A stretch of DNA of 64,000 nucleotides from Pelomyxa schiedti (taxonomy: Eukaryota > Protista > Evosea), in contig JAHLWZ010000844.1 in assembly GCA_020536535.1 (NCBI GenBank), positions 16,251 through 80,250 on the forward strand, in the 5' to 3' direction. Shown here piece by piece: positions 4,053 to 35,026 of this stretch (its first letter is position 1; the number at the start of each line of letters is the position of its first letter). The translations under genes were made by a program, and so were the position numbers. The notes beneath the pieces are model-generated. The model searched no databases. It was given only the letters and a program-made list of their open reading frames with translations, and was not told the DNA's origin.

Positions 4053-4138
4053 GAGCAAAGAGAATAGGGTGTTGTCTTTTCTTGAGAAACTAAAAGCACA
4101 CTTTTGTTTTTTCCCAAAACTTCTGAAATAATTATACA

Positions 4139-7100
4139 CTAACAAGCATCGATCAGTTCCTCAAGGACACTGATGACGGTCAAGAAGGCTAGGGAAAGGT
4201 TAGGGTGAGAAGCGGAGATGAAGACGTACAAGGCCTTTCAGATGGCTTCTGGTCCCAGCAGTCAACAATCAACTGGGCATATTCGGGTGGTGCTGTTGCC
4301 GGAATCTCTTCTCTGTTGCCAGCAATTACGAAGGAATCTTTCAAAATGAATTTGAGGAATAATGTTTGGGGAGCATACAGAAATCCTTCAGTGATTGATA
4401 CGGTTGCATTTCAGTGAGGATTTGCCAAAGCATAACCCCGTAACTAAATACGTCTGTTTCAACGCCATATTCGTTTGTTCCAGAGAGTACTTCTGCACCG
4501 AGTTAACACGAAATTTTCCTTTGGGTTTTTACCTGGAGCCATATCTGAAGTAGTGGTAGGGGGTAAACATAAGTAATGGATAAAGGTAAGTTTATTAGTG
4601 TAAGGTTCACACATATTGGGGTGCCAATTAGGACTGTCATCTGCCGGGCAGATGCAGCAGTCAGTGCTGGGGAGGCCGAGGTCATCCCTCGTGCACTCAC
4701 AGTCCGTGATGTGCCAAAATCGGAAACCTGAAAGCATGTGTTTTGACAATAAGTTCTCAGTACAAACCTTGCAAGTGAGAACAGCGTGCTTATTTATTGA
4801 CACCATCAGAACTTGTAATAAATATATCAGTAAGAAAAGCAAGTCCGAGGGAAGGAGAGATTACTGTTGTCGGGCTGCAAAGGAAATGAATTTTGTGCAT
4901 AACATCTTAAATAGGAAGACAGAAGTACAAACCTTCAAGTCTCTGTGAACCATATTGTTTGCATGCTTTTAAAATTCGTATTATCTTAGAAAAAAGTATC
5001 ACGAAATAAAATATTACCAAAAAAGACATGGCTGTAAGAAAAAAGCAATTAGCAACTACTGTTGACTTCAGAAACACACCCAAAGCAATATCCTTCGCAA
5101 TCTTTAACTTAATTATCCAGGCTAGGTCCTTGTTTTTCTTTTTTTGTTGTAAGTAATGGAAAAATGGGCCGGAATGACAACTTTTAGTACAGATGACAAG
5201 TTCCCCAATGCCATGTACTCCTTGTGTTTTATCCAGTCAGAATTTTTTAAAAATATGGAAGATATGTATAGGCAATGAGGAATTCTATACTCACTGTTAT
5301 AATGCATAACTGAGTAAAGGACATCAAACAAAAGTGTAATGAGGATAAAAAGTAAAGGAGAAAAAAGTCAGAACTCGAGAAAGGGTAAAATTCAGAAACC
5401 TTTCGCGGAATTGTCACACTATCATTGGCATGTAAGAAGGAAAAATCAGTTAAAAGATGTACATACGCTCCAATAAAATTAACAACGTGGGTGTGCCTCA
5501 ATTGAGTGAGAAGTTTGATCTCTCTAAGAGGGGTAAGGAATGTAGGAATACGATCAGTGTGATGAACCTTCTAAATTCAGCAAAAGTCGTTTCAGTAGGA
5601 TTTTGGTCCTTGAGAAGCTTGATTGCCACAGGAGTGTGACGCCAACTCCCTCTCCTGTAAAATCATGTGTTAGGTGTATTAAGCGGGAGAGGGCTGCCAA
5701 CCAAACTGCCGCAAAGCTTCCTTCTCCAATCTTATCCTCAAAAAGCAAATCAGTGTAATCAAGCTGACAGGGAATTGTGAGATATTTACAGGAGAAATTT
5801 ACAAGCTCACTTGCGTTGACAGGCACGTTGTTACTGTGAACTTGATAGAGTGGCAAAAAGTTGCTTCAGTGTCACTTAAAGTCTTTCTATGACTGAAAAC
5901 ACCAGTTTTATAATCTTCACATACATTAAGAATCAAAATCGGTATGAGTGAAAGAAACCAGCTGCAATAAGTCCAAACTGAGCATCAATTTTTGTTGTGC
6001 AAGACACAACCAGCTTAACCTGAAACTCTGTATCTTTTCCCTATGTACCTAAGTTATCCAGCCCTCTCTCAAAGAAAATGTTTACCTTGGAGACCACGGA
6101 TTGAGGTGGGTCAATTGTCAAAGTGTAACGGTCATCAGATGGAATAACAAAGGAAATCAACATCGTGGTACCACTGTTTTTTACAACGAGTGTATCTGTT
6201 ACTTCCTATAAGAGTTGGAGGTAAAATAAACAACTCGCGGTTCACTACCTTATCAATGTCATAAGGCTCAGTTCCACCAAAAGTCAATATAGGGGGTGTT
6301 ATCTTTTTTTGTTTTGAGGGGAACAATGTAACAAAATAAGTGCATACCACTAGACTCGGTGAAGGTGGAAGAAGGGGTAACGAAAACTGTGGGGGGGAAA
6401 GAACGGGAGGTAATTTGGACGGTGAACTCGTACGTGCAAGACCATCATCACTAATTGGTGACGCATTATAGGTCCTGGACTTTCTTTCTGACATTTTTGC
6501 AATAGATTTGCTGTGGTCTAAGCCAAGACGGCGGCTGAATGGACAGAGTTGCTTCTGTTTATTTTGACAAAAGGAAAAGATTGTGAGGTGTAGTACGGGC
6601 TTTTTGGCGTGTGTGTCAGTGGCGATCCAACTTAATGGGCTCCCACAAGGGACTCCTTCCAGGTCTACATCAAATCCTGCCATTTGTGAGAAAAACAAAG
6701 GCGAAAATTTCTCAATGTTTACCTGTGAAAGATGGGACAATCTTCTTGGTTGAAATTCGTGACTGTGTCCCACTGAGTGACCACACAGAAACGTGGGGAA
6801 GTGCGTGGTACGGCGTAATGAAGTCAATGTGGTGCCTATAGTACTGGGCTCTAAACCTTCCACTTTGAAACAAAGCTGCTGTGTCAATTTTCCGGAAAAT
6901 GTTCCACACAAGGTCCAAAGGCACCAGGGTGGACAGTGTTGACGCTGATGTGGGAAGTCTCTGAAGTTCAGGCTTTGTCTCTTCTGATTCTGGTTCCCCT
7001 GGTCCAGAGTAACTGAACATCTATGAGGCTAGTACCAGAAAATGCTTTGAACACACCTGGAAAGCACTTCCAACAACTCTGGAGTTCCTCCCGCTTGCGC

Positions 7101-9096
7101 TTTTAGTATGGGCGATTCACCATATTTGTTTTTGATGTCTGTGTTTAAATTGAGATGCTACAAAACATTAGGAAACACACAAGGATTGGCATCAGCCAAC
7201 ATCAACGAATTTATAAAATCCAAACGTACACCCGATATGGTGCATGAATTCATCAATGCTGTATCACCGGCGTCCGATTGTGCATTTACATCAATTCCTG
7301 CTGACAGCAGTGTGTGGAGAAGCTAGTTTATGGTGGTTAAAGGATAAAAAAACAGAGGTAGGCGTAAGGGACACTTACAGCCGTCGATGTGGAATCGGAT
7401 TTGAAAGTTTTTGCAAGAAAATGAAGTGCAGTCTGCTTTCTTGTTGTTTGTTGTAACATGTTTGCACCTTTCTTTATGAGAAATTCCGCGACAGTAAAAT
7501 GTCCTTGCGAGATTGCTGCCCTTTTGTTTGGGAAAAAGTGTGTTAAAAGTATACCAGAGGCATCAAAACGGAACTCATACAGCATTGGTGTCATGTCCAG
7601 ATCATCCTGCACAATTGAGTGATGAGCCAACTGGGTTAATGAGGGAGAAAGCTCACACCTTAGGGTCGATATCAGCTCCTCTCTTTAGGAGATCCCCAAC
7701 AAGGTCACGATTGCCTGCATAAGCGGCAGCATGTAATAGTGTTTGACCATCATCTGCCTTTGCATTAATAGTGCCATCCTTGTTTGAGTAAGCAAAGGGG
7801 TTAAACAAAAACGGGAATGAGTGATACTTTGATACTTGCATCGATTTTTTCACCCAAAGGCTTAGTTAAACCTCGTGGCGATGCAAGGATGAGACGTATA
7901 GCTTCTTTTAGTGCTGGCGCTGTTGTTGGAGTGACAAATGCTACCCAGCACATCTCAAAATTGCCTTCAACTGCAGCTGTGAATCCTAGGAAGGAATATT
8001 AAATTGATCTCATGCATGAAATGAGCAACCAGTTTGAGAAGCCGCAATTTTGGAAGAGGGAACAGTATTGAGGGGTGCTTGCTCTCGGTATCCAAACAAC
8101 CAAGCAAACACCTTTGGTGAGCTGGGAAATGGGTCATTAAATGTCACTGATACAACTCCTCCTGAGGTGGAGTTTGTACGTTGCTGGCCACTTTGCACCA
8201 TTATTGCTCGAGTGGGTAGATTTGCGAAAATCCCTTCTGCCATTGCAATACCAATTTTCACAGTTGCACTGCTGTTAGTATGGGTCAGTGGGATGGATTT
8301 CTGTAAAGAAGGCGCACTTTGTCATGGATTCCAATCGCGGAGTCGCAGCGGCAACAAAAGTGGAATCAGTTGGTGGTGAGCATTGTATTACAATTGAAGG
8401 AACCGTAAGAAGTGTCATTTTTGGGGATAAGAGTGGAGAGTGTGCAGGTGACAGAGTGCTAGTAGGAGTTGTACTGCTTGGTGGTGTTCGTGGAGACCGT
8501 GGTGAAGAGCTGAGAATTGGTGTGCTGGAAGGTGTACGGGGAGTAGGCACAGCAAGGAAGGTCGGGCTTGCTCTCGATTCGTCATTTGATTGAGTGTGCT
8601 CAGAGAGCATTTGGGGTATCTTGTCCACCTCATAGCAGTAATCCGGTGAGGGTGTTCGTGTAATAATAGTGGGAGTTGTTGCTTCCGTGGATTTGCGTGA
8701 ACAATCCGAATCGGCGGACGATTCGCCCGATTTTTCGTGTCCGTGTTTGTGTCTGTGATGTGATTCCCGTCTGGGTTTGTGGTGCCTGCTTTCGCTAGCT
8801 CGTCTTTCGTGCTCCACGTCGTTGGTGTCCGCTACAACCACAACAGGCACAGTCACCACACTAGCCGCCGCCGCTGGAGGAGGTGATAACGGCGGCGACG
8901 GGGCTTCAACCGCAGGAGCTACGATACGCGTTGGTCCCGAATCGCCGGTGGTGGTTTCATGTGCAGAATCGTTCGCTTGCGCAGTCGTGATTGTTGTCGC
9001 GGGGGTGGTCGTAGCGGTGGCGGCACAGCTGTCTACGTTACACACACCAACATGCGGTAGATCCGGTTTGGAGGCACTCCGGTAGCGAACGAGCAT
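4139..9096 (-). CDS. Multi-exon TKL kinase, copy A: low-complexity N-terminus, 2 H-type-lectin-like domains, ankyrin repeats, Ig-like module, kinase
   Basis: Ankyrin motifs GQTLLHAAAYAGN, KQTALHFLA and GDTALM. Kinase motifs IGEGSFAAV, VAIK, HRDLK|PDN, SDFGTSR, GTPI|YMAP|E, DVFSYG and LIVDCWDQKPSERP. Likely start MLVRYRS (9096). Ends ELIDAC*. Confidence 0.85.
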
Positions 9097-9250
9097 TTGT
9101 TTGATTGCCTTTCTGGAAAAAAAGTACCAAAAGATCATTTATTGGCTGTTCAGGCAGTGCTGCCTCGCTCTGACAATTTTGAAAGGAAATTTGTAGATTC
9201 GGAGTAACTTTGGTTATCGTAAAGGCTCTGTGTCTGCAGTGCACACAGCT

Positions 9251-13030
<3,780 letters not shown>

Positions 13031-13344
13031 CTTGACGGTGCTACCTCGTGGGCAAGGGAAATTAAAATGCAGTTCAGTAGATCACAAGATCTGAATTTGA
13101 TGATTGAAACAATTCTGCGAAAGGAAATTTTCCAAAACAAGCTTGATACTGCTTGGCTGGGGCGACTTACGTTTACTGCGGGCTTGAATGTTGAACGAGA
13201 ACAGACATACAACCAAAGTAAAACCCTGCATGTACTGATGATCAATTAGGAATACCGGCTGGGTTGATAACGTCGCACAGTGTGGCGAATTGGCTGATTG
13301 GCTCCTTCCAAATCGGAGATTTCTGGCCTGTTGCTTTTGTTGGG

Positions 13345-13377
13345 GTGTCACATCACACACTGGGTGTGATGTGGCAC
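13345..13377. repeat. 14-bp inverted repeat (hairpin) with a 5-nt loop, upstream of the HELLS-like gene
   Basis: GTGTCACATCACAC-actgg-GTGTGATGTGGCAC: 13 of 14 positions Watson-Crick paired plus one G:T pair. Confidence 0.75.
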
Positions 13378-13559
13378 AGGGTGCACCTGTTTGGCGGCTC
13401 AGACTCGCTGCTGCCCTGTGCACATGGTGCTATCTTGAAAGTGGGAACTGGATAGCCACGGTTCAAGATATCAGAAGAGCCAGAAGACTCGAGCTCCCCT
13501 TTCTTTGTGATGAATGAGGACAGCAGCCGGCGTGTCGGGAGAATGCCGCTTTTCTGAAC

Positions 13560-15344
13560 CGATTTTGGCACAGGGAAGGACTTCGAGAGCAATGGCAAAT
13601 GGCTGGTGTGCACAGAAAGCATCCTCGTTCTTCCCCCATTCCGAGCCCCGCACTCGTGCGAGAGTGTAGCGTCTGAGAGCTGGAGGTGTCCCAAATTGTG
13701 GCTGTGTGGTGCTGGAGATTTCTCACCACCGTCTTTTCCAGAAAACCAAATAATTACGTCGCTCAGGTGATTCTTCTAGGCTCTAGTATGTCACAGTGGC
13801 ATGTGATTTTTTGTTGATTTGGAAGCAAGCTTTTCCAGCAGAAGACTGGTTCCCACAAGGGAGACATTTGCCCTTCCATCTTCCCTTCTTCAGAACATGA
13901 AGAAGACGTGGTACTGTTCCCAGGGTATCCTCTGGACGCAACGTACCCTCTAGTGGGCAATGTGTTCACTGTAGCCCACCTGTGGACCACCACGAGCATC
14001 GTAATCATCAACAGAACCAGCTGTTACTTTGGGTTTTTGGCTTTTGAAAGGGAATCGCCCTCACCCTCACAACAAGCCTGCATCCTGCTCCTCCACTTTT
14101 TTTTTTTGGTGAAGTTCCTCTTGTTTATTAACTTAACTTAATTTAGACACATGGGTAAGATTTAAGTTTGTTTTATTTCGTTTTCGTTCATCTCACATCA
14201 ACACAGGTCATTGAAGATAATGATGAGGAGAAGCGGGCACAGCGGTAGTTTCCATTTATCTTCTCCATTTTTCTTTTCTCACGTTTGAAAATCAGATGCT
14301 GTTTCATAAGTTAGTTGAGAGGCAGACAGGAACAGAGAACCTGGAGGCAGAAGCAGGTGCACACCCAGAAGAGTGTGTGCAGCTCGGCTCCATTCCACTG
14401 GTATTCCTCTTCTTTGAGTCCCCCAATAGACTCACCTCCAATCTCTAGGTCCTTTCCTGCCCAGGAGAATGGTGTGTGCAGCTCTGCTCCGCTTTCCTTC
14501 TCGAGTTCTCACACTCTAGGTAGTGTTGCAACTTGTCGGCGGCTGAGATGACCCTGTCATCGCCACGGCAAATCCGTATCGTCACCCATCAGAAGAAAGA
14601 ACCTGTTCCTCAAATCTATCTCTGCGTTGCTTATCATCCCTGCGATTGTAGCTGGAGGGACTTTCAACGAAAATCTTGTCATAAAGGCCCTCTCGGTTGC
14701 CACTGCTGCAGAGGTTCATCACCCGTTCTCGAGGTCGTATTGCCCAAGTCTTTAGCAAGTTGAGTTCCAGTTCAGTGGAGAGCCTATTTGGGGAGGCATT
14801 GGAAAGGCACAAGGGCTGGATGGACTTCTGCTTCAGATGTTGAGGTTTCGTGCCTTTCAAATCAAAGACCTTCCACTGGTGGGGAGGCCCTTGTGGATTT
14901 GGCCAATGAATTAACTCTCTCCCGGCCAGCAACAATCTCAAAACAAGTTACGGAAACGATCCCAAAAAGAAACCCCAGTTACCAGGGAACATAAGATTCT
15001 GTCCATGCCGGTAGAATGCGGAGGAAAAAGGTACAATACAGAGCTTCACATGAAGGAGCATACAATTCCTGTTGATGTGGAATCGTACCCACGGCTTGCC
15101 TTCTGGTTGCATCATCAGTATCTCCAACACCAACATAAGAGAGCTCATGAAAGAAATATGCAGCGAGGTTACTTCACAAATCCACAGAAGGGTGGCCACT
15201 GCTTTTACAAGTGAACTTGCACCGCTCGCTCCCTGCGAACCAAGGAAGCTTCCTCCTGCACTGCTTTCTCGTGACGAGACTAAAAGGCAACAGTTACTTA
15301 AACACCACAATTACCGGGAGCCTCAGTACACAGACGAACTGTAA
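13560..15344 (+). CDS. Possible multi-exon hypothetical protein; exon structure unresolved
   Basis: Several GT..AG-bounded open segments (e.g. AGGTFNENLVIKALSVATAAE|QVEFQFSGEPIWGG, ELMKEICSEVTSQIHRRVATAF...YTDEL*). No recognisable domain and the 5' end is uncertain. Confidence 0.35.
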
Positions 15345-15762
15345 CACGGTGACCACCAAACCACTGTGACTACCCTCATCAAAGTTGCTCCTTTGCTCCA
15401 CGTCATTCCCCTTTGTAAGGTGCCACTGTAACCAACAATGCAAGAACCCTGTTTTTTTGAATTGCTCGACCGGGTGTGTGGCGCAGGGGAAAAGGCACTC
15501 GCTACAGCCAGACGGTTCACAAGCTCCAAGTTGGGTTCAGGGAGTGTTTCCCAACTGAAAGCTAGTTATGGTCACTACTGCCGACTACGAAACAGAACTA
15601 CAGCCATCATTTCGAACTACCAGAGTGTGGTTCCTCTGGGAGCAAAACTTTCCGCGCCAAATTTTTTCTGTTTTAAGGGAAAATTTAGAAAAAAGGTAAA
15701 AATAACAAAAAAAAGAAGGGCAGCTGGGGAAGGCTACCGGCAAAGAGGTGGCAGACAACAGC

Positions 15763-22169: not shown

Positions 22170-23628
22170 CTACAACTGTTGGTGTGACAGTTCAACGAAC
22201 CTCTCTTTGTACGCGGATAACCACTCAAGCTGACTTGGCGAAACGTAAAACTGGAGGAGATCCTTAAGTTTCTCCCAGTTGGAATCGTCTGTTCCAGGGC
22301 GGAGAACGTGGCTGTCTATTTTCCCGGCAAGACCCGCTTTGGTGTCTATTGTGTTGATTAGTTCCTGACTTTTTTGTGTGTGTTTGTTTGGTATGTACTC
22401 ACTATAGGTTTGTTGCCAAGCACCTCTATCCACGCGGTCTCGTCCAACACTACGGTCGACCATGAGGCATTCATCTGGGCACTTGCCCCATGATGTCACT
22501 CGGGAACCAAAGAGTATTTGGTCATAATACCAACGAGGGGAGGTTGCCTTGTCGCCGACTTTCCACTTAGCCCCATATCGTTGCTGAGCTTGCTTTAGCT
22601 GATACTTCACTTCGGCTTCAGCCCAAGCAACTGGATTTTGGCTTCCGGGGTACATTGTTGCTGGCTGCATTATATCGTGCCAAACGGACGCAGTTGCCCC
22701 AATATAACATATAGGGAACATATTGGCAACTTTGCTATCACCCCGGCGATAGGCATTAGCATAGAGAAGGTGGAGCGGCTTGGTAGACTTTTGATTATCA
22801 AAGTAAATTTCTGATAGTGGCCACATATCTTGGAAAGAGTGGGAACCGTCAGAAGAAGTAAAACGTATGGAAATTCTCACCAGCATCCGAAGTGAGGATG
22901 TATGGGTCGTCACCCAAAAAAGAAGGAAGACTCATCATGAATCCATACAACCGGGCCACTTGAACGGCTGTAATCTCCCATTCCCCATCTTCACTGGGAT
23001 CGGTGAACCCTTCATACACCAAAGCACCCGCTTTCCTGCACATGTCTAGTGCAAACTTCACATAAGGCGGGTCATTATCATGTGTGGCTACTTGTAGGAC
23101 GGGAGTGTAACCTGCAGAAACCGAATTATTAAGTTGATTCTGGTACCAAACAGGAGGTAGGAATTTCTATAATCTTAATAAAAAGAGATTTTAGTGTGGA
23201 CTTCCATATGGACCTAAGTTGGACCACAGCAGAGAGGTTATGGGAGTGAAAAACAGGTAGAATGAATCCACCGTCGAGGAAAACATAGCGACCCTGGCCG
23301 AAGGGGAATCCCCATCCGCGCTCCTCGTCCCACAATTCCCGGTCGCTAGGTCACACTCCTGGTCCATTTGCAGTTCCGAATCTCCCATGCACTCCCGATA
23401 GACCGAGTCGCACGCGCTTTCTGCCGACACAGAACCCGCCTCGAACCCACCATTATGGGCGCACTCGCACACTCGCACTCTACACAGGCACAGGCTGGAC
23501 TTATCATGCGCCCTCGAGAAGGCCAAATCGCAATCCACCTCGCACCCCTCACCATTTGCTCCAACCGTTCCCACAATGGCGGAGAGCAAGAGGCACAGCA
23601 ACAGAACGGCCACGTCACGTTGCATCAT
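22170..23628 (-). CDS. Secreted/luminal protein: signal peptide, Cys-rich domain, glycosyltransferase-like (DxD) domain
   Basis: Signal peptide VAVLLLCLLLSAIVG followed by a Cys-rich segment. YILTSDA|DMWPL (DxD across an intron), FPICYIGA, WYYDQILF, DRVDRGAW, IDSHVLRP. Confidence 0.6.
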
Positions 23629-23776
23629 CCGTAGATAGTTATCTCAATGACCACTTCAGAGAAAACTTCGATTTGTGTGGACTCACTCGAGGCCTGATGT
23701 TTGAGGAGCGAGCCATAACAAAATTTTTTCTTTTTCCTTCTTATGAAACAAAACACAAATGTAGGTTAGTATTGAA

Positions 23777-26700
23777 TTAGAGGAGCTGCAACTGCACAAG
23801 CTGTTCAAGGCATTTTCCTAAGGCCAGGAAGGCTGTTTTTAAAGAATGAATACATTACTCAGGGGGTGGAGTAACACACGAGGGCGTTTTGCTGGGTCCT
23901 GATGCCAACAGTCACTGATCAATTTGGCATATTCAGGTGGCGTTTCTGATGGAATTTCTTCTCTTTTCCCAGACATGACAAATGTATCTACCAATTGTTA
24001 AAGATATTACATAAGCGACTCGATCTTACAGAAATCCTGCAGTCTTATATATGGGGGATATCCAGTAACGATTTGCCATAGCAAAACCCCATAACTAAAC
24101 ACATCTGTTTCAATTCCGTAGTCTTGTGTTCCAGATAAAATTTCTGTGTATTGTGAGGCGAGAGGAATCACAGGGTTTTTTTAACCTGGGGCCATATCTG
24201 GTTAGGAAGGGGTGAAGTGAGACATTAGTGCAATGCTTAGTGTATATTGCTTATACATATTGGGGTGCCAATTAAGACCGTCATTCGCCGGAGTGCCGAA
24301 ACAGTTATTTCTGGGGAGGCAGCAGTCATTCCTCTTGAACTGACAGCCCGTGAGGTGCCAAAATCGGAAACCTCACAATAATAAGCTTTTGATTGAAGAA
24401 GAGGAAGGGAAAATTACTTTGCAAGTTATGTCACAGTGCTTGTTGATTGAAACCATCAAAACTATTGATACATAAATAATTTACAGTGAAAAAAAGGGTC
24501 GACACTGTTGTCCGGCTACAGGAAGGAAAAAATTTATTTGGTTGAAGAGAGAAGTAATGGTTACCTTAAGGTCTCGGTGCACAATGTGATTTGCATGCTT
24601 GTATAATCGTAAGGGTATCGAATACAAAGGAAACACTCTTACCAAAAAAGACATTGCTATTATGTGGGGGTTAAGTGAAAATAGAATGAAAAAACCACTT
24701 ACCTAGGGCTATATCCTTGGCAATCTTCAATTTGATTACCCATGCCAGGTCCTGGTTTTTCTTGGTGGTGTGAGAAAAAACCCAAAGGAAGGAAAACTCT
24801 ACAATCAAAACGGAAGACAAATTTCCAAGTGCCATATACTCCTTTTTCCCAATGTAAGAAAGAAAAGAAAGGAATACCTAGAAATAAGAGGTAACAAAGA
24901 AAGCACACCGTGATAATGCAAAGCTGAAAAAAGTTGGATATGGAAAAGTGGGGTGAGTTTTTCTTTAACGCAAAAGGAAAAACCTTTAAGGGAATTGTAA
25001 CACTGTAATATCATTTGGAAGTGAGAAAATGATGAGCTTCGAGATTTTTTACATACGCGCCAATGAAGTTGACAATGTGGGTATGCCTCAGTTGTGTGAG
25101 AACTTTGATTTCTCTGAGAATAAAAAATTTTGAATGAGAAAGAGAAAGACAGGAAGAAACCTCTTAAATTCTGCAAATGATTCCTCAGTGGGATTTTGGT
25201 TTTTGAGAAGTTTTATTGCCACAGGTGTGTGACGCCAACTCCCCTTCCTTCAGAGTGTGTGAGAATTCGTTTCACTTTTACTTGATTTGCAGTGTATGAA
25301 TATTGTGACAGGAGAGTGTGGAGTGGAAAGAGAATGAACCAGACTGCTGCAAAACTTCCTTGTCCAATACTCTCCTCAAAAATCAGATCAGTATAATCAA
25401 TCTAAGGCTATCAGACAAAATTTTGAACATTGAGTGAGGGGTGACGTTGGTAATCCCTTCCCTCTCCTTCTGTTACAGCACACAACAATATTTTGATAGA
25501 CACTATTCACACCTGAGTTGAGAGACACGTTGTTATTCTGAGCCCTATAGAGTTGCAGAATGTTGCTTCAGAATCACTCAATGTCTTTCTGTGACTCATA
25601 AATCCAGTTTTGTGATCTGAATTGTGTGAGAGTTGAGTCTGGGAATGTGGCAGTGCAGTTGGGAAAACGAGAAGGGAGAAGAGAACAGAAGAAAAGAACA
25701 ACCGGCAGCAATCATTCCAAACTGTGCATCAATGGTTGTCGTGCAAAACACAGTCAACCTCGCCTTGAACTCAACATCCTTTCCCTGTGTTGTGTGACAT
25801 CTGACGTGAGAAGATTTATAGCAGGAGGCAATATGTGGATTGAAAGAAAAACAAAAAAAAACCTTGGGGATTGCAACTTGGAGTGGATCGATTTTCAAAG
25901 TGTAACGGTCATCAGAGGGAATGATAAACGAAACCAAAATTCCACTCCCGTTGTTTCTGACAACAAACGTGTCTGTCACTTCCTTTTGGTACATAAGAAA
26001 AACAAACCAAAAACCAGGAAAAAACCTTGTCAGTATCACAGGGTTCAGAACCTCCAAATGTCAGTTTGGGTGGTGTTACCTGTTCAACAGAAAGACGGTT
26101 TCAACTTATTCACGTGAAATACAGAAACATACAGTGAGATTTGGAGAAGGCAGAAGCAGTGGCAACGAAAACCGAGGTGGTGCAAGAACAGGTACCGGTT
26201 TTGGAGGTGACTTTGGCCTCAATAACTGGTCACCCTCATGCACGGGAGAAGCAGTGAGTGGCGTGATGATGGACCTCCTTTCAGACATGTACGCAAGGGC
26301 CTTCTTGTCCAATCCTGTTTGGGTGTAGCATGGGCACAGTTGTTTCTGTAACACATATGAGTCATAGAGTTCCTAATTTCAAAAAATAAATACCGGCTTT
26401 TTTATATGTGTATCAGTGGCAATCCAACTCAGCGAGTTCCCAACTGTAACACCCTCTCTCTCGAGATCTACATCAAACCCTAGTGACATCCAGTCAAATT
26501 GAGGTAAGGGGTAGGTGGTGCGAAGGTATTTTACTTGCCTTTGAGACTTGGAGAAATCTTCTTGGTTGGAATTCGTGACTGTGTGCCACTGAGTGACCAC
26601 ACAGAAACATGAGGGAGGGTGCGATACGGTGTGACAAAGTCAATGTGGTGCCTAGAGTAACTGGCTCTAAATCTTCCACTTTGAAACAGAGAGGCAGTGG

Positions 26701-29334
26701 GACCAATCTTTTGGAAGACACTCCACACAAGTTCCAATGCCACAACTGTGGAAGGCGGTGATAGTGATTCTGGAAGGGAAATACGCTGTTCATTCTGAGT
26801 AGGCTTTTCATTTTGTGGGTTGCACATTGATGTCGGTCTGGAGTAATTGTGCAACATCACTAACAAAATATCTTCAATAAGTTGCAGACCTGGAAATGGC
26901 ATCTATCAACTTGATGTTCCCACTGGCCTTGGCCTTTGTAATGGGTGACTCCCCATTGTTGTTCTCAATGCCTTTTTGTTTGAAAACAGTTGTCAAATTT
27001 GCCAAAATGCCAAAGGAAAAAAGAGAGTCATACAAGGATTTGCCTCTGCAAAGATGAGAGAAGAAATGAAGTCTAAATGCAGTTCCGGCGCTGTGCAGGC
27101 CATCATCAATGCCGTGTCTCCGGTGTCCGTTTGTGCATTCACATCAATTTTGGACACCAAGAGTGTGCTGAGAAGCTGTTCTCTACGTTAATGCGTTCAG
27201 TCTAAACAGTATGGCAGCCAACCTGACTTGAAGAGGAATCGGCTTTGAAAGATTTTGCAAGAAAATGCAGTGCAGTTTGTCCTCTTTTTGCTCGATGTAA
27301 AGTTTTGGCACCCTTTTCAATAAGTAGGTTGGCAACATCAAAATTCCCAGATGAGATTGCTGCACTTTTTTTGCAGAGAAAGAGAGAAAGCACTATTATT
27401 TATTGGTTTTTTTTTCTAAGTGCATACAGTAAGGGTGTAATACCCAGATAGTCCTGTGTGATTAAAAAAAAATTCCCATCAAATGATAAAGTTACAAGTC
27501 TGTGAGCATACTTTGGGATCAATTTTCGCCCCTTTGTCCAGAAGATAACTCACAAGTTCAGAGTTCCCCGAATATGAAGCAACATGCAAAAGAGTTAGAC
27601 CAGTATTTCCTTTTGCATTTATGGTTCCCTCCTGATTGAACATGAGTTACAAAATGAAAAAAAATGGGAGATGGAAGGCACGAGAAGGGGGAATTGGATG
27701 ACTGGGGATGGAGATGACACCTTGATGCTGGCCTCAACCTTTTCCACCAACTGCTTGTTCAACCCTCGTGGCGATGCTTGTATGAATCCCACGGCATCTT
27801 TCAGTGCTGGTGCCGTGACAGGAGTGGCAAATGCAATCCAACACATCTCAGAATTCCCTTCGACTGCAGCTGTGAACCCTGGTTTTGAGATTGAGTGTGA
27901 GATTGGAGTGAAAGTGATGGAGTGAGTGAGTGGGTGACGATTGACTCAAAGCCAACCAACCTGTTGAGGAAGCGAGAATTTTTGAGGTGGGAACAGCACT
28001 GAACGGTGCTTCGTTTGAATACCCAAAGAGCCATGCAAGCACTTTTGGTGTGCTTGGAAACGGTTGTGTGAATGTCACTGACAACACTCCCCCTGATGAT
28101 GTGTGTGCTCGTTGTTGACCACTGAGGAATATTGTGGTTCTTGTTGGTAAAGTATTAAAAATACCCTCACCAGCTGCAAGGTTAATCATCACTGCTGATG
28201 ATCTTTTTAACATTAGAACCTAGTCTATGATCATAGAGTATGGACTTACTTGGTCATAGCTTCCAGTTGTGGATGAACCGCGGGGATAAAACCTGGCTCA
28301 ATCGGTGGAGTGGCAACTGCAGAAGGAACCGCTTGGTACATGCTTATTGGCTGTGGTGACGAGGAAACTGGTGGTTGTGGTGAAGGTGAAACAGGTGCAT
28401 TGAGTAGTGGTGTTGCAGAAGGAGAATAATTACACATTACCGTTGGGTGTGTGGAAAGTGAAGCCGGTGGCTGTGGTGAAACCGAAAGAGGTGGCTGTGG
28501 GGCAATTGAAACTGGCGGCTGTGGTGCCATCGCCACCGGCGGCTGCAGTGACGGCGACGGCGAAGGTGATGGTAAAGGTGAATGTGAAGGTGATGGCAAA
28601 GGTGAAGGTGAAGGCGAAGGTGAGTGTGAATGTGATGGGGTGAATGTTGTTGGCATGGGAGGAGTCATGGGCCTCGGGGCCACAACAGGCAGCAGCAGCA
28701 AGCCGCCGTCGCCGCTGCAGTGCGATAACGAAGGGGACAGCGGCGCCTGCGTGGGCGTCGACACGCGGTCCAGCGAGCAGGGCGTGATGCAGCGCAAGTT
28801 GGGCGACGCATCCGCCGAGCTGCTGAAGGAATGTTCGGGAGACTGGTACGGAGTCGTCAGGCTGTCGGTCCCACAAGTCCGAGTGCTTGACGTGGTGGTG
28901 GACGAGGAGAATGACTGGGAAGAAGAAGAAGAAGAAGAATAGCACCCGCCGGGTGTCGAATCATTTGTCTGGGAGTTGGATTCCCAGTCGGAATGAGGAA
29001 GAGGAGGAGGCGGCGGCGGAGCGGGTGCGGGCACAGTCAGGCGCAGGTGTTGTGATCTGTGCTCGCGTTGCTTGCTTTTCAGGATTGTGGTGGTCTGCCA
29101 GCCGCCCGTCGAGGCCCTCGGCTGCTTCGCTTCGTCGCCCAGTGGGGGTCCACTGCTTGTTGTTGGGCCTCCTAGTTGCATGGCACTAACACTGCGGGTG
29201 TACTTGGGCTGTGAGATCGGCGCCGAAACTGTGGGAAGGCATGGGCTGCTGCTGTTGCTGCTGTGAGTGTCAGTTTCGGAACCAGAGGGAATTGAAATGC
29301 TGCCTCGGTTGCGTGCGACCAACCAGGAGGTCAT
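23777..29334 (-). CDS. Multi-exon TKL kinase, copy B (lectin-ankyrin-lectin-Ig-kinase)
   Basis: Same exon order and motifs as copy A: SGQQRAHTSSGGVLSVTFTQPFPSTPKV, LTLLHVASYSGN, HHIDFVTPYRTLPHV, IGQGSFAAV, VAIK, HRDLK, SDFGTSR, LISDCWHQDPAKRP. Ends LVQLQLL*. Confidence 0.85.
27691..28122. repeat. Near-identical duplicate of 33674-34132 (lectin-1 exons plus intron, kinase copies B and C)
   Basis: Base-level near identity including intron sequence. Further shared blocks at 26894-27000 / 32867-32975 and 25503-25988 / 31380-31897. Confidence 0.9.
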
Positions 29335-29536
29335 TGTGTGGGCCCAGGTTTCGCGAAAACAATTGGTTCAAGGTCTCAGAATCAAGATCCCTCGGCTTGA
29401 CAAGTTGGGTGACTTCCGTTTGCTATCAAACTTCAAAAAGTTAATGTTCTCAGAACGGAGGAAACCGATCGGTTTCGCTTAAGACTTTGGGAGCTAATAT
29501 TGGAACTAAGAGGGTCACAGCATTTGTTTTGTATTA

Positions 29537-32500
29537 TTACAGCAGACAGGATTTTACAAGGTGGTCTAGGACAGCAGTGATGGCCGGAAAGGCTGGCAGC
29601 TATGTGAGAAGAAATCAGAGAAAGGAAAGCAAACGCACGAGGTCGTCTTGTGGGATCGTGATCCCAACAGTCGACAATCAACTCGGCATATTCAGGTGGT
29701 GCTGTTTCTGGGATTTCTTCTCTCTTTCCAGAAACAACAAAGGAATCTATATTCCCCAGGTGAGCCAAATAAAAGGGGGGGTTGGAGTTTCTCACAAAAG
29801 TCCTTCATTGTTCTGTAAGGGAGCATTTCAGTGAGGATTTGCCATAGCATAATACCGTAGCTAAACACGTCCGTTTCAACACCGTAATCATTGGCTCCAG
29901 ATAAAACCTCTGTGTAGTGTGAGTTGAGAATACAAGAACGTAGTTAAATTTAGGTATCTACCTGGCGCCATATCTGTTTTCGTTTCAATGATGTAGGGAG
30001 GAGGAAATGCATGGAAGGGTCAGAAATAGGCAACAAATTTCTTCAATACATATTGGGGTGCCAATTAGAGCTGTCATCTGCTGCGCTGATGAAGCTGTCA
30101 GTGCTGGGGAGGCTGAAGTCATTCCTCTTGAACTGACAGTCCGTGATGTGCCAAAATCGGAAACCTGGAAATATGTGTAACAAAAAAAAGGGGAAAGGGG
30201 GCATATCACCTTACAGGTCACATCCGCATGTTTACTGATTGACACCATAAGAACTTAAAAAATATTGATCAGACGAAAAATCACGGAAAGTAAAAGTAAA
30301 CAGGATGATGTATACTATTATCTGGCTGGATGAGAAAGTATGTTGATGAGTTAAGCGGGTATATGAAGGAAGGAGCGAGTACCTTCAAGTCTCTATGCAC
30401 CATGTTGTTTGCATGCTTTTTATTTTTGAGATTAATTGTCTCAGACAAGAATTGGATGATACCAAAAAAGACATTGCTGTTGTGGTACGAGTGTAGTGTG
30501 AAAGTCTTGTTAAAATCGGACAAAGCTTATGGAGAAGAAAGGATTCTGACCTAGTGCTATATCCTTGGCAATCTTCAGTTTGATGATCCAGGGCAGGTCT
30601 TTGTTTTTCTATTATTATGAATTTGATACAAATGAAGGAACAGTAAGCTTCCAGATGAAGGGAAGTGAAGAGACATTTAGAAAAGATGACAAATTTCCCA
30701 GTGCCATGTACTCCTTTTTTGAGAAAAAAAAGATTGGGTCAAAAAAGTAGTGGGAGGGTTTAGTGAGGGTGATAAGGCACACCGTTACAATGCACAACTG
30801 GAAAGAAAGTTAAGCAGAACACATAAATACAATTGAAAATGCAATATTTCAAAAGAAATGAAAGGGACCTTGGATAGAATCATTACACTACAAATTTGAA
30901 TGGGTGACAAATGAAAAGAAGAGGATAAACATACGCTCCTATGAAGTTGACAATGTGGGTGTGCCTCAGTTGTGTGAGAACTCTGACCTCTCTGAAATTA
31001 AAATTGCAGAGGGATTAATGAGAATACGAATTACACAATTTTAACCTTTTAAATTCAGTGAAGGAGGCCTCAGAGGGATTTTGGTTTTTGAGGAGTTTGA
31101 TTGCCACAGGTGTGTGACGCCAACTCCCCTTCCTTTACAGTATGAGATGATAGTTTAATTTCTATTATTTCTTGGTTTTGTGTGTCATGTGCATGAAGAG
31201 TGCATGCAAACCAAACCGATGCAAAACTTCCTTCTCCAATTTTTTCCTCAAAAAATAAATCCGTGTAATCAAGCTACTATTGTAAGACAAAATTTTACAT
31301 ATGTTGGGGCTTCATTTATCACCCAACTTCCCTGTTCCCTTCAAATTTTTGATGATATACTAAACAAACTTTGTTATAACTATTCACACCTGAGTTGAGA
31401 GCCACGTTGTCATTGTGAATTGGATAGAGTGGCAGAATGTTGCTTCAGAATCACTCAATGTCTTTCTGTAACTCATAAATCCAGTTTTGTGATCTGAATT
31501 GTGTGAGTGGGAGAGCTGAGTGTGGGAATGTGGCATTGTCACAGTGTGGCATCGTGGCAGTGCATTTGGGAAAAATGAGAAGGGAGAAGAGAACAAAAGA
31601 AAAGAACAACCGGCAGCAATCATTCCAAACTGTGCATCAATGGTTGTCGTGCAAAACACAGTCAACCTCACCTTGAACTCAACATCCTTTCCCTGTGTTG
31701 TGTGACATCTGACGTGAGACAAGGTATGATAGAAGACAAGGCGGAGAAAGTAGAAAGACAAAAGAAAAAAAACCTTGGGGATTGCAACTTGGAGTGGATC
31801 GATTTTCAAAGTGTAACGGTCATCAGAGGGAATGATAAACGAAACCAAAATTCCACTCCCGTTGTTTCTGACAACAAACGTGTCTGTCACTTCCTTTGGT
31901 TTTTGGTTGTGTATCAATTATTTTTTCTTGCCAGCTTCGAAAAAAGGAAAAAACGAACCTTATCGATATCAACAGGCTCACCACCAAAATCCAGCTTGGG
32001 TGGTGTTACCTGTAAAACGAGTGGGGGAAAGAATATTCCTTCAACAATCGGGAACATACAGTGAGATTTGGAGAAGGCAGAAGCAGTGGCAACGAAAATG
32101 GAGGTGGTGCAAGAACAGGGACAGCTTTTGGAGGTGACTTTGGTCTCAGTAATCGATCACCTTCACAGGCAACAGAAGCAATTGTTGGTATAATAATGGA
32201 TTTCCTTTCAGATATATATGCAAGAGACTTCCTGTCAAATCCTGCTCGTCTGTAACAGGGACACATTTGTTTCTATTAGTAGGTTTGTTGTTAGATGTGG
32301 TGCCACCAAGAATCACTACCAGCTTTCTTGAATGTGTATCTGCCGCAATCCAACTCATTGAACTGCCAAGTGGAACACTGTCCTCCAAGGCCACATCAAA
32401 CCCTGTTCCAACTCAGTCAAACTTAAAGAATTGGGATTTTCTTTGCCTGTGAGAGTTGATGCAATCTTTTTGGTTGGAATTCGCAACTGGAACCCACTGA

Positions 32501-35026
32501 GTGACCACATAGAAACGTGAGGAGGTGTGCGAAAGGGTGTGATGAAGTCAATGTGATGCTGACAGTTTTGAGCTGTGAATTTCCCACTTTGAAACATGTT
32601 TGAACTGTCCCCTATTTTTTGGAAGACATTCCAGACAAGCTCCAATGCCACAACTGTGCAAGGTGGTGACGCTGGAGAAAGGGGAAGAAGTTGCTTGCTG
32701 AGCTCCACCCTTTCACTCAGTGAGTTGGTTGTTGCCGTGGATTCGTCTTCTCCCTCCATTGAGCCTGACATAAACATCGATGTTCCTCCAGAGTAACTGT
32801 ACAATGTCAACAACAAAATGTAAGAGGTGAACGAGAGAGGGGGATATAGATTGTTTTTACGCACCTGGAAAGGGCATCTATCAACTTGATGTTCCCACTG
32901 GCCTTGGCCTTTGTAATGGGCGACTCCCCATTGTTGTTCTCAATGCCTTTTTGTTTGGAAACAGTTGTCAAATTGCCAAAAGGGAGAAAAAAAAAGGAGG
33001 CACACTAGGATTTGCCTCTGCAAAGATGAGAGAAGAAATGAAGTCCAAATGCAGGTTTGGAGCTGTGCATGCGATCATCAATGCCGTGTCTCCTGAGTCC
33101 GTTTGTGCATTCACATCAATTTTGGAGCACAACAGTGTGCGGAGAAGCTGTTAACAATTGTTGAGGTTGCTGGATAAAGTCTTCTTCAACTTACAGATGT
33201 TGAAAGGGAATCAGATTTGAAAGATTTTGCAAGAAAATGCAGTGCAGTTTGCTTTCTTCTTGTTTGGGGTAAAAGTTTGGCCCCCATTTTGATGAGTGCC
33301 TCTGCCACAGCGAAATGCCCTTCTGAGATTGCTGCCCTTTTTGTAATTACTTCTTTGAATGAGGGAAAAAAAAGATACTACAGCAATGGTGTCATGTCTT
33401 GGTTGTCCTGCAATATAAAGATTGTATGTATGATTTTAGACTCTTTTTGTGGGAAGAGGTATGTGCCTTGAGTTCCAGGCAAGGTCCCTTCTTCAGCAAC
33501 TCAGAGACAAGGTCAGAGTTCCCCGAATATGAAGCAACATGCAAAAGAGTTTTTCCGTCGTCTGCTCTTGCATTTATGGTTCCCTCCTGATTGACACATG
33601 AGGGACAAAATGAAAAAAAAAAAGGAAGGTTCGAGAGAGGGAGGAAACGAAAAAAAAAAGGATGGGGTGGTTGGAATTGGATGACTGGGGATGGAGATGA
33701 CACCTTGATGCTGGCCTCAACCTTTTCCACCAACTGCTTGTTCAACCCTCGTGGTGATGCTTGTATGATCCGGATGGCATCTTTCAGTGCTGGTGCCGTG
33801 ACAGGAGTGGCAAATGCAATCCAACACATCTCAGAATTCCCTTCGACCGCAGCTGTGAACCCTGGTTTTGAAATTGAGAGTGAGATTGGAGTGAAAGTGA
33901 TGGTGAGAATGGTGAGAATGGTGAGAGTGAGTGAGTGGGTGGGTGACGATGGACTCAAAGCCAACCAACCTGTTGAGGATGCGAGAATTTTTGAGGTGGG
34001 AACAGCACTGAACGGTGCTTCGTTTGAATACCCAAAGAGCCATGCAAGCACTTTTGGTGTGCTTGGAAACGGTTGTGTGAATGTCACTGACAACACTCCC
34101 CCTGATGATGTGTGTGCTCGTTGTTGACCACTGTGAAGCATTCCCGACAGCGCAGGAAAGCAGCCAAAAAGTTCTTCCACAGTTGCAATGCCAATCTTTA
34201 CAGTTGAACTACATCCATGATGAATGTTAGGTACCAGCCAAGAAGGCCAGGCAAACAAAAAAGGGAAAAGCCAAAAGGTTACAACTACACACTCCAAAAA
34301 TAGCTGCTGCCTGGATGCTGTTGAGCCTACACTTGCAATTGACGTCACTTCAGTTGGAGACAACGTGGCCGGCGGCCTGGAATTAAGATTTGAAACGGCC
34401 GGCACGTGCACCTTCGGGTGCGAGCATGCCAAGTCCGGCGACTGCGGCGGCGTCGACGCGCAGTCGGCCGACGAGCTCGTCATGGTAGCCGCCGCAGATG
34501 CGCACGACGACGACGACGAAGACGACGAAGACGAGGAGCCCGCCCACAACGACGAACCATTTTCCGCGCCGATTTGGTTTTGCTGCTGCTGCTGCTGCTG
34601 CTGTCGAGGTTCGGGCTGTGACTGGTATGAGGTGCTGGGGCTGCTTCTGGTGCAGGTTTTATCTGATAAGACTGAGGGCGGTGTTGGAGTGCCGGGTGTG
34701 GGCTGTGAGTCGTCAGAATCTCGCGACGTGGTGGCTGGTGTTTGCTTTTCCTTGTCTCTGTCTTTGTCGTGGTGCTTGTGCTTGTGCGACTGGTGTTTGG
34801 TGCCGGACGATTTGGCTTCGCCACCGCTGCTGCCTTTGTGCCTGTGTTTGCTCTTCTCGTGGCTGTTGGGTCGCTTTGTTCCACTTTCGGCCCGAACTCG
34901 GCCTTCCTCGTGTGGGGTGTGCGACTTGCTCACGGGCTCAGATTCACCCATTGGGGGCGTTGGTGGTTTGATGTCGATGTTATCTGGTGGCGAAGGAGTC
35001 CACTCCACCGTGTTGGTGGCCGCCAT
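29537..35026 (-). CDS. Multi-exon TKL kinase, copy C (lectin-ankyrin-lectin-Ig-kinase), tandem with copy B
   Basis: GKTLLHVASYSGN, KQTALHFLA, GDTALM, MFQSGKF..HHIDFITPFRTPPHV, IGEGSFASV, VAIK, HRDLK, SDFGTSR, LIVDCWDHDPTRRP. Ends VKSCLL*. Confidence 0.85.

What the first reader, a model, noticed from the sequence alone, without database searches (positions are those of the whole stretch)
4139..35026. Candidate new family of cytosolic lectin-ankyrin-lectin-Ig-TKL kinases (three paralogs)
Seen: genes at 4139-9096, 23777-29334 and 29537-35026 share one architecture that the ORF track hides. Each has an unrelated low-complexity first exon, then domain L1 (xSGQQR...V.VTF..PF.S.PKV.AWLFG...P.SKI.AS.|GF....EGN.EMCWxAF), about 4 ankyrin repeats and domain L2 (FQSG.F...HIDF.TP....PHV..WSLSG...P.KKI...|GFDV.LE....G..+SWIA). 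A Pro-rich linker, a beta-rich Ig/MSP-like module and an intact kinase (VAIK, HRDLKPDN, DFG, APE) follow. L1 and L2 are homologous to each other. Known: the SG...V.F..PF...P.V...GF...WIA pattern resembles H-type lectin (discoidin C-terminal) and phage gp53-like beta-sandwich domains. The Ig-like module plus HRDxKPDN kinase resembles the cytoplasmic part of Entamoeba transmembrane kinases. Inference: I see no signal peptide or TM helix, so these may be intracellular glycan-sensing kinases that oligomerise through the lectin domains, for example sensing bacteria, symbionts or damaged vacuoles. I do not know this architecture from the literature.
Basis: partly seen in the sequence, partly recalled or inferred. 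Interest (0 to 1): 0.82.

Follow-up and report, generated by a model that had tools for sequence, protein, structure and literature searches.

The report
Cytosolic double H-lectin–ankyrin TKL kinases
Three neighbouring genes of the anaerobic amoeba Pelomyxa schiedti encode soluble kinases in which the intracellular half of an amoebal receptor kinase is joined to two divergent snail-lectin-type domains flanking ankyrin repeats, a sensor cassette that related amoebae also attach to Rab, Ras and Rap regulators.

Summary
The window is Pelomyxa schiedti (Archamoebae). Three minus-strand genes (9096-4139, 29334-23777, 35026-29537) share one architecture: a Ser/Thr/Pro-rich first exon, L1, 4-5 ankyrin repeats, L2, a Pro-rich linker, an Ig-like module and a TKL kinase.

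- **Expression:** a 3543-nt spliced transcript contig covers gene 1 from end to end, including microexons of 9, 10 and 15 nt.
- **L domains:** L1 and L2 are homologous, divergent H-type-lectin/gp53-like beta-sandwiches. This rests on a profile search, the only PDB sequence hits (Helix agglutinins) and fold searches. The aromatic sugar-pocket loop of discoidin and HPA is deleted (L1) or lacks aromatics (L2), so lectin activity is unproven.
- **Ig-like + kinase unit:** it aligns end to end with the cytoplasmic part of Entamoeba, Tieghemostelium and Pelomyxa transmembrane kinases. Here no signal peptide or TM helix is found.
- **Wider family:** a fourth kinase paralog exists. The H-lectin–ankyrin cassette is Archamoebae-wide and is also fused to VPS9, RasGEF, C2-RapGAP and F-box–Ras outputs. 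The L1–Ank–L2 unit arose once and is shared by RasGEFs and kinases.
- **Existing records:** GenBank already holds the proteins under generic names, and genes 3 and 2 are mis-fused there. First readers of this scan noted the same cassette elsewhere in this genome.

Verdict: a new variant of known kinds; its function is open.

The parts
4139..9096 (-). Gene 1, complete: 29 exons, 1154 aa (GenBank KAH3746169.1 = P0002)
   Evidence: Exact mapping of P0002 onto the window. A spliced 3543-nt transcript contig has matching joints.
8320..9096 (-). Gene 1 exon 1: Ser/Thr/Pro/Ala-rich low-complexity region (aa 1-259)
   Evidence: The transcript contig covers 8318-9055 without a break.
7828..8270 (-). 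Gene 1 L1 domain (aa 261-393) on two exons (8270-8028, 7983-7828): N-terminal helix, H-lectin-like sandwich, two C-terminal helices
   Evidence: Weak Pfam H_lectin match (E 0.011 on the exon, E 0.0048 on the protein). Family profile E 6e-48. Model of an intronless paralog domain.
7059..7778 (-). Gene 1 ankyrin repeats, about 4-5 (aa 394-563)
   Evidence: Pfam Ank families, E 1e-15 to 2e-17.
6597..6927 (-). Gene 1 L2 domain (aa 593-687) on two exons
   Evidence: Family profile E 4e-33. BLASTP against L1 gives E 2e-5.
6348..6554 (-). Gene 1 Pro-rich linker (aa 688-756)
   Evidence: The transcript piece covers 6348-6554.
5811..6302 (-). Gene 1 Ig-like (PapD/MSP/ASH-like) beta module (aa 757-876)
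   Evidence: AF2 model is all-beta, pLDDT 62. Foldseek matches subtilase Fn3-like, MSP/VAP, HYDIN PapD-like and OCRL ASH domains at E 4e-4 to 5e-3.
4142..5763 (-). Gene 1 TKL kinase domain (aa 877-1154), with microexons
   Evidence: PK_Tyr_Ser-Thr 194 bits. Nearest solved kinase is CTR1 at 4e-46, then RAF, ABL and LIMK. Microexon letters are present in the transcript.
23777..29334 (-). Gene 2, same architecture. Exon 1 29334-28249; L1 28201-27959 and 27876-27721; Ank 27631-26889; L2 26836-26537 and 26477-26394; linker 26345-26130; Ig-like 26076-25513; kinase 25401-23780
   Evidence: Mapping of the second half of P0001. The exon 1 ORF is 362 aa from ATG 29334 and ends with the same MTK motif as gene 1.
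29537..35026 (-). Gene 3, same architecture. Exon 1 35026-34295; L1 34207-33968 and 33859-33704; Ank 33586-32867; L2 32798-32445 and 32400-32320; linker 32272-32057; Ig-like 32006-31390; kinase 31273-29540
   Evidence: Mapping of the first half of P0001. The kinase exons missing from that model are intact with AG/GT flanks. There is a double stop after the C-terminal tail.

Best explanation
Shown: these are expressed, soluble TKL kinases of Pelomyxa schiedti, three in the window and a fourth elsewhere. The cytoplasmic unit of an amoebozoan transmembrane kinase (juxtamembrane Ig-like module plus kinase) has lost its ectodomain and TM helix. It carries instead an N-terminal L1-ankyrin-L2 cassette behind a disordered Ser/Pro-rich exon. 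L1 and L2 are divergent members of the H-type-lectin/phage gp53-like beta-sandwich superfamily. The double-L cassette arose once and is shared as a unit with two RasGEFs. Single-L-ankyrin cassettes drive VPS9, RapGAP and F-box-Ras proteins across Archamoebae.

Inferred: the cassette plays the part that the ectodomain plays in receptor kinases. Solved domains of this fold (HPA, discoidins, phage fibre tips) are homotrimers. I therefore expect each L domain to oligomerise, possibly on binding a still unknown ligand at a common cytosolic or endomembrane site. That would bring the kinase domains together for trans-autophosphorylation. The ankyrin repeats would hold a protein partner. The ligand need not be Gal/GalNAc, since the canonical pocket loop is missing.
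For: - Single mRNA across all modules; the gene model matches it.
- The L profile hits bona fide H_lectin proteins: P0015 at E 3.6e-14, a protein with Pfam H_lectin at 72.9 bits. Of the 70 best hits, 31 carry H_lectin.
- The only PDB sequence hits are Helix agglutinins, E 0.017-0.028, aligned over the whole domain.
- Foldseek's top 4 are HPA/HAA. VIA gives Z 6.6 for phage tailspike ends, 6.2 for discoidin I, 5.5 for HPA and 5.3 for gp53. The ESM Atlas's nearest clusters are Gp53-like_C and H_lectin.
- The Ig-like + kinase unit aligns over 93-100% of its length with kinases that have a signal peptide and a TM helix some 50-110 residues upstream: Entamoeba marina and invadens, Tieghemostelium, Pelomyxa P0144.
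- No TM-grade segment is found here.
- Output diversity of the cassette.
- The tree has L1 and L2 clades with mirrored topology.
- Discoidins are cytosolic trimeric H-lectins with the pocket at the trimer interface.
Against: - Oligomerisation was not modelled or measured.
- Single L domains stay below Pfam's H_lectin cut-off (16-17.5 bits against 24).
- Fold Z-scores are middling (below 8), and the Ig model has low confidence (pLDDT 62).
- The TM and signal-peptide test is only a hydropathy scan.
- Genes 2 and 3 have no RNA check.
- Some soluble relatives of the Ig-kinase unit without the cassette exist (P0139, P0150), so the unit does not need this cassette to function.
Confidence: 0.55

Rival explanations
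1. One reading: true cytosolic lectin kinases. L1 and/or L2 bind glycans of bacteria, endosymbionts or damaged vacuoles, and binding switches the kinase on.
For: - Homology of L to H-type lectins.
- Dictyostelium discoidins are cytosolic H-type lectins recruited to damaged Mycobacterium vacuoles.
- P. schiedti lives with prokaryotic endosymbionts (abstract of PMC10579272).
- Sister cassettes are fused to endocytic and small-GTPase regulators: VPS9, RapGAP, RasGEF.
- An Arg aligned with HPA Arg63 is kept in L2.
Against: - The pocket aromatics needed by discoidins (DscA W235/Y241) lie in a loop that the profile-HPA alignment shows as deleted in L1. In L2 the loop is shorter and has no aromatics.
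- The position aligned with HPA Asp26 is Gln or Phe.
- No binding data exist.
Confidence: 0.25
2. The cassette is a protein-binding adaptor rather than a sensor. L and ankyrin dock on a common protein, for example a small GTPase or a coat or cytoskeletal component. This places kinase, GEF, GAP and F-box outputs in one pathway, without ligand-induced oligomerisation.
For: - Nearly all partner domains act on Ras-superfamily GTPases or are GTPases themselves: VPS9, RasGEF, Rap_GAP, F-box-Ras.
- Ankyrin repeats are protein-binding modules (general knowledge).
- The sugar pocket is not conserved.
Against: - Solved domains of this fold are trimeric ligand-binding tips (titles).
- No partner is known.
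- Strong conservation of the L core (the FQSG, PxV and GF...W motifs) across all outputs fits a structural or oligomeric role at least as well.
Confidence: 0.17
3. Artefact: mis-assembly, pseudogenes or chance ORFs that make no such protein.
For: - The GenBank model for genes 3 and 2 is wrong.
- One related locus on contig C133 carries stops.
Against: - A spliced transcript covers gene 1 fully.
- All exons are open with GT..AG borders in all three genes.
- Three DNA runs cover the locus.
- Orthologous cassettes occur in three other Archamoebae transcriptomes or genomes.
Confidence: 0.03

Closest known systems
Discoidin I/II of Dictyostelium and Helix pomatia agglutinin (H-type lectins, Pfam PF09458)
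   Same: The same beta-sandwich core and sequence motifs (F..PF...P.V, GF, W-I-A). Discoidins are also amoebozoan and cytosolic, and they act in sensing bacteria after vacuole damage.
   Different: Here the domain sits inside large signalling proteins and has an added N-terminal helix and two C-terminal helices. It lacks the aromatic pocket loop (W235/Y241 in DscA). It is not paired with an F5/8C discoidin domain. Trimer state and sugar binding are unknown.
Transmembrane kinases (TMKs) of Entamoeba and other Amoebozoa
   Same: The Ig-like juxtamembrane module plus TKL kinase aligns end to end at 29-38% identity.
   Different: TMKs have a signal peptide, an ectodomain and one TM helix. These proteins have none of these and carry a cytosolic L-Ank-L cassette instead.
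Phage tail-fibre and tailspike C-terminal domains (Gp53-like_C, PF21882; LKA1 gp49, phi297 gp61, AP22 gp53, R-pyocin fibres)
   Same: Best structural matches: Z 5.2-6.6 in PDB and TM 0.79 by the matched row in the ESM Atlas.
   Different: Those are extracellular trimeric receptor-binding tips of viruses. No sequence-level family match to Gp53-like_C was found for L itself.
Plant lectin receptor kinases (G-, L- and C-type lectin RLKs)
   Same: A lectin-fold sensor joined to a TKL/IRAK-like kinase in one chain (general knowledge; G-type examples appear as distant kinase hits).
   Different: Plant lectin domains are extracellular and of other folds. Here the whole protein is predicted to be cytosolic.
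Sister proteins with the H-lectin-ankyrin cassette in Archamoebae (VPS9, RasGEF, C2-RapGAP, F-box-Ras)
   Same: The same cassette. The RasGEFs share the duplicated L1-Ank-L2 form.
   Different: Different output domain. The kinase output was found only in Pelomyxa schiedti.

Membership tests
H-type lectin domain (Pfam PF09458) | Sequence match to the family profile at or above the gathering score (24 bits) | tested here: inconclusive
   Single L1 pieces score 15-17.5 bits and P0002 scores 17.4 bits. P0001, with four L domains, sums to 40.8 bits. Cassette relatives P0016, P0033 and P0035 pass at 25.7-33.8 bits. The L profile finds true H_lectin proteins at E down to 3.6e-14.
H-type lectin domain (Pfam PF09458) | Six-stranded beta-sandwich fold of HPA and discoidin | tested here: met
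   The AF2 model has pLDDT 78.5, with the core at 82-97. Foldseek's top 4 are HPA/HAA with probability 1.0. VIA gives discoidin I Z 6.2 (rmsd 2.8 over 76 residues), HPA Z 5.5 and SLL-2 Z 4.8.
H-type lectin domain (Pfam PF09458) | Gal/GalNAc pocket with conserved aromatic residues (DscA W235/Y241; by equal spacing, HPA W83/Y89) | tested here: not met
   In the profile-HPA alignment the W83-V88 stretch is an insertion that L lacks. L1 has a 10-11-residue turn between GF and W. L2 has 14 residues there without aromatics.
H-type lectin domain (Pfam PF09458) | Homotrimer with binding sites at subunit interfaces | not testable with these tools
   Only monomer prediction is offered.
TKL group protein kinase | Complete catalytic core (GxGxxG, VAIK, HRDLKPxN, DFG, APE) and closest similarity to TKL kinases | tested here: met
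   Motifs are present in P0002 and on the exons of genes 2 and 3. PK_Tyr_Ser-Thr scores 194 bits. CTR1 is the best solved match at 4e-46, followed by RAF, LIMK and MLK.
Amoebozoan transmembrane kinase (Entamoeba TMK type) | Cytoplasmic Ig-like module directly before the kinase | tested here: met
   Alignments span query residues 1-25 to 394-397 of the 398-residue unit in P0155, P0170, P0173, P0158 and P0144.
Amoebozoan transmembrane kinase (Entamoeba TMK type) | Signal peptide, ectodomain and single TM helix | tested here: not met
   No 19-residue window reaches 1.8 in genes 1-3 (maximum 1.67). TMK relatives give 1.8-2.4 at the N-terminus and before the unit. This is a hydropathy scan only.
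Ankyrin repeat | Pfam Ank families above cut-off | tested here: met
   Ank_4 63 bits, Ank_2 58 bits and Ank 55 bits in P0002.
PapD-like / MSP / ASH Ig-like domains | Family-level sequence match or a confident fold match | tested here: inconclusive
   No Pfam hit. The model has pLDDT 62. Foldseek gives E 4e-4 to 5e-3 to subtilase Fn3-like, MSP/VAP, HYDIN PapD-like and OCRL ASH domains.

The most novel reading that the evidence does not exclude
The H-lectin-ankyrin cassette is the recognition arm of an Archamoebae-wide cytosolic pattern-recognition system. One sensor fold detects microbial or symbiont surface molecules, or exposed luminal glycans. It is wired directly, by gene fusion, to kinase, Rab5-GEF, Ras/Rap-regulator and F-box ubiquitin-ligase outputs. 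In Pelomyxa the kinase arm would police its permanent prokaryotic endosymbionts.
Probability: 0.2. Interest if true: 0.85.

Novelty: new variant of a known kind. Interest (0 to 1): 0.56.

Why it matters
Every domain here is known, but the combination is not. I found no paper describing an H-type-lectin fold inside cytosolic signalling proteins and fused to a receptor-type kinase unit.

The same cassette drives Rab5-GEF, RasGEF, RapGAP and F-box-GTPase outputs in four genera of Archamoebae. That marks it as a general input module of unknown ligand in a lineage that includes Entamoeba's free-living relatives.

A 2026 preprint shows that Dictyostelium discoidins, which are cytosolic H-lectins, sense bacteria after vacuole damage. 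Against that background, sensor-effector fusions of the same fold give a directly testable route to how amoebae couple intracellular microbe or symbiont detection to signalling. If L turns out to be only a trimerising scaffold, this is still a clean natural example of a receptor kinase turned soluble by swapping its ectodomain for an oligomerisation cassette.

The work also corrects two GenBank gene models.

Tried and rejected
- **Word-based protein search with the 553-aa open stretch of gene 3** (L1 region): blank, a length-window effect.
- **Pfam on single exons:** only weak H_lectin hits. There were none for L2, the Ig-like module or the kinase microexon pieces. The intronless L1 domains of paralogs on C769 and C255 gave no H_lectin hit either.
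- **RNA runs:** none is labelled as RNA. One run of unknown kind proved to be cDNA by its spliced contig.
- **Literature:** searches for H-type lectin with kinase and ankyrin, with Amoebozoa, and for H_lectin with ankyrin found nothing on this architecture. The P. schiedti and M. balamuthi genome papers do not mention it. A search for HPA pocket residue numbers found nothing, and one paper search timed out.
- **TM anchor in gene 1 exon 1:** rejected as unlikely. The hydrophobic stretch scores 1.67, contains Pro and is absent from genes 2 and 3.
- **GenBank fusion of genes 3 and 2:** rejected.
- **Not done:** Work was exon by exon by reference, or with GenBank proteins returned by the tools.


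Full report
**Organism and locus**

The window is contig C844 (16251-80250) of a 52-Mb assembly. Exact look-ups show that the proteins encoded here are GenBank entries of Pelomyxa schiedti, an anaerobic archamoeba. KAH3746169.1 (P0002, 1154 aa, 'tyrosine protein kinase') is gene 1. KAH3746176.1 (P0001, 2149 aa, 'STY46') covers genes 3 and 2 together. The genome paper (PMC8887013) reports 7.4 introns per gene and single-cell Smart-seq2 transcriptomes. It does not mention lectins or these kinases.

**Observation**

Six-frame reading of the minus strand shows the same order of conserved pieces in all three genes. Mapping P0002 back gives 29 exons from 9096 to 4142.

Laying public runs on 4100-9150 showed three DNA-like runs and one run (X4) with a single 3543-nt contig. 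That contig skips about 24 introns of 40-52 nt with GT..AG ends on the minus strand. It also carries three microexons as 'letters between':
- 9 nt, which reads M-A-P of the APE region;
- 10 nt, which reads P-D-N of HRDLKPDN;
- 15 nt, which reads LCIIT.

Its joints agree with the P0002 model. So one mRNA carries the first exon, L1, ankyrin, L2, linker, Ig-like module and kinase.

**Genes 2 and 3**

- The first half of P0001 follows gene 3 but jumps from 30928 to 30161, leaving out kinase subdomains V-VIb.
- It then runs past the gene 3 end into a wrong frame of the gene 2 first exon.
- The omitted exons are all present and open with AG/GT flanks.
- Gene 3 ends with a double stop near 29537.
- Gene 2 has its own 362-aa first-exon ORF from ATG 29334, ending in the same MTK motif as gene 1.

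All searches used single-exon references or GenBank proteins returned by the tools.

**What L is**

- Single exons give only weak Pfam H_lectin matches (E 0.005-0.03, profile positions 2-24), because an intron splits the domain.
- Genome-wide search found at least ten further loci with L-like exons, and L1 and L2 queries cross-hit.
- Two paralogs (contigs C769 and C255) have intronless L domains.
- I aligned 31 single-exon pieces and whole domains into alignment A2.
- Against PDB sequences, this profile hits only four chains, all Helix pomatia or Helix aspersa agglutinin. E is 0.017-0.028 and the alignment spans the whole lectin.
- Against 1.84 billion representatives it finds 93 proteins. Among the best 70, 31 carry Pfam H_lectin at E <= 1e-5. 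One example is a bacterial subtilase with six repeats, with profile E 3.6e-14 and H_lectin at 72.9 bits.
- Cassette relatives in Mastigamoeba and Mastigella pass the Pfam cut-off themselves.
- The AF2 model of an intronless L1 has pLDDT 78.5, with the core at 82-97. It consists of a helix, a beta-sandwich and two helices.
- Foldseek ranks HPA/HAA first to fourth, with SLL-2 and a phage tailspike close behind.
- The Foldseek-independent search gives phage tailspike ends (Z 6.6 and 6.4), discoidin I H-lectin domain (Z 6.2, rmsd 2.8 over 76 residues), HPA (5.5), AP22 gp53 (5.3), pyocin fibres and SLL-2.
- The nearest ESM Atlas clusters are Gp53-like_C and H_lectin.

The Z-scores are middling, but sequence and structure point to the same family. 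Direct BLASTP of L1 against L2 gives E 2e-5. I conclude that L1 and L2 are divergent H-type-lectin/gp53-like domains.

**Is it a lectin?**

A 2026 preprint shows that Dictyostelium discoidins are cytosolic trimeric H-lectins recruited to damaged Mycobacterium vacuoles. Binding needs the pocket aromatics W235/Y241 in DscA. By equal spacing from the C-terminus these match HPA W83/Y89; this mapping is my inference.

In the profile-HPA alignment the stretch W83-V88 is an insertion that the L family lacks.
- L1 has a tight turn of 10-11 residues between the GF and W motifs.
- L2 has 14 residues there without aromatics.
- The position aligned with HPA Asp26 is Gln or Phe.
- An Arg aligned with HPA Arg63 survives in L2.

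So the canonical Gal/GalNAc pocket is not kept. Bacterial H_lectin repeats also vary in this loop, so binding of another ligand is not excluded.

**The rest of the protein**

- Ankyrin repeats pass Pfam.
- The kinase is complete, and its best solved relatives are CTR1 (4e-46), RAF, ABL, LIMK and MLK. It is therefore a TKL kinase.
- The 120-residue module before it has no Pfam match.
- A shallow-alignment AF2 model of that module is all-beta with pLDDT 62. It matches subtilase Fn3-like domains, MSP/VAP, HYDIN PapD-like and OCRL ASH domains at E 4e-4 to 5e-3. It is Ig-like, but family membership stays open.

Searching with Ig-like + kinase finds proteins that align over 93-100% of this unit. These include kinases of Entamoeba marina and Entamoeba invadens, Tieghemostelium, Mastigamoeba, and Pelomyxa itself. 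Several of them have an N-terminal signal-like segment and one TM-grade helix some 50-110 residues before the unit. The three window proteins have no segment at that level.

**The wider family**

The L profile hits with names come from Pelomyxa schiedti, Mastigella eilhardi, Mastigamoeba balamuthi and Rhizomastix libera. L is followed by ankyrin repeats in all of those scanned. The C-terminal outputs vary:
- VPS9, some with an N-terminal C1 domain;
- RasGEF, with two L domains;
- C2-RapGAP;
- F-box plus a Ras-like GTPase;
- an alpha/beta hydrolase;
- kinase.

The kinase output occurs only in Pelomyxa: P0001, P0002 and P0004. P0004 is a fourth paralog on contig C852, mis-fused in GenBank to a Ras and a Sec23-like gene.

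A maximum-likelihood tree of L domains puts all archamoebal L in one clade (support 99/95) apart from bacterial H_lectins. The double-L proteins form one clade (96/95) that splits into an L1 clade and an L2 clade. Both subclades have the same inner order: RasGEF C769, then RasGEF C179, then the kinases. So the duplication happened once, and L1-Ank-L2 moved as a unit between RasGEF and kinase genes. The tree is midpoint-rooted and the domain is short. No rows that met the length and E-value filter were left out.

**Mechanism**

Shown: the architecture, its expression, the homologies, and the loss of the pocket loop.

Inferred: the cassette replaces the ectodomain as the input of a receptor-type kinase. 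Solved domains of this fold are homotrimers (and the entries). The most economical model is therefore ligand- or site-dependent oligomerisation that brings kinase domains together. I give this 0.55.

**Novelty**

The sequences are public but generically named. I found no description of the cassette or of the kinase fusion. First readers of this scan had noted the same cassette at other places of this genome: F-box-Ras, RasGEF, VPS9 and another TKL kinase. My Pfam scans of the GenBank proteins agree with those notes. I rate it a new variant of known kinds, with interest 0.56.

Noticed in passing
window 23777-35026 (minus strand): GenBank KAH3746176.1 fuses genes 3 and 2. It skips intact kinase exons of gene 3 (between 30928 and 30161), reads past the gene 3 double stop near 29537, and uses a wrong frame of the gene 2 first exon (28819-28442).
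   Followed up: yes
window 4495-4613, 4811-4933, 5220-5400: Kinase microexons of 9, 10 and 15 nt (MAP, PDN, LCIIT) are present in the spliced transcript contig. Introns here are only 40-52 nt. The same microexons, with AG/GT flanks, are present in gene 3 at 29971-29963, 30325-30317 and 30797-30783.
   Followed up: yes
window 27959-28129 and 33968-34138: The L1 first-half exon encodes an identical 57-residue stretch in genes 2 and 3, although their first exons differ. This suggests gene conversion between the tandem copies.
   Followed up: partly
L001 (G000:C852:5000-14999): A fourth kinase paralog lies here, 64% identical to gene 1 over L1 to Ig-like. GenBank KAH3745950.1 (1967 aa) joins it to an upstream Ras-family and Sec23/VWA-like gene, which is probably another mis-fusion.
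   Followed up: partly
L005 (G000:C133:34000-43999): This is a copy of the C179 RasGEF-type L1-Ank-L2 cassette, with stop codons and broken L exons. It may be a pseudogene or an assembly error.
   Followed up: no
G000:C231:29496-30384 and C1546, C1557, C1026: These loci hold canonical H_lectin repeats above the Pfam cut-off (up to 32.6 bits), unrelated to the ankyrin cassette. Several repeats sit in tandem on C231.
   Followed up: no
window 33395-35053 (minus strand): A 553-codon open frame runs through gene 3 exon 1, two introns, both L1 exons and the first ankyrin exon without a stop. A plain ORF list therefore merges coding and intronic sequence here.
   Followed up: partly
P0006, P0010 (Pelomyxa VPS9 proteins, other contigs): The VPS9 versions of the cassette carry an N-terminal C1 (diacylglycerol/phorbol-ester) domain. 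This hints that the cassette family works at membranes.
   Followed up: no
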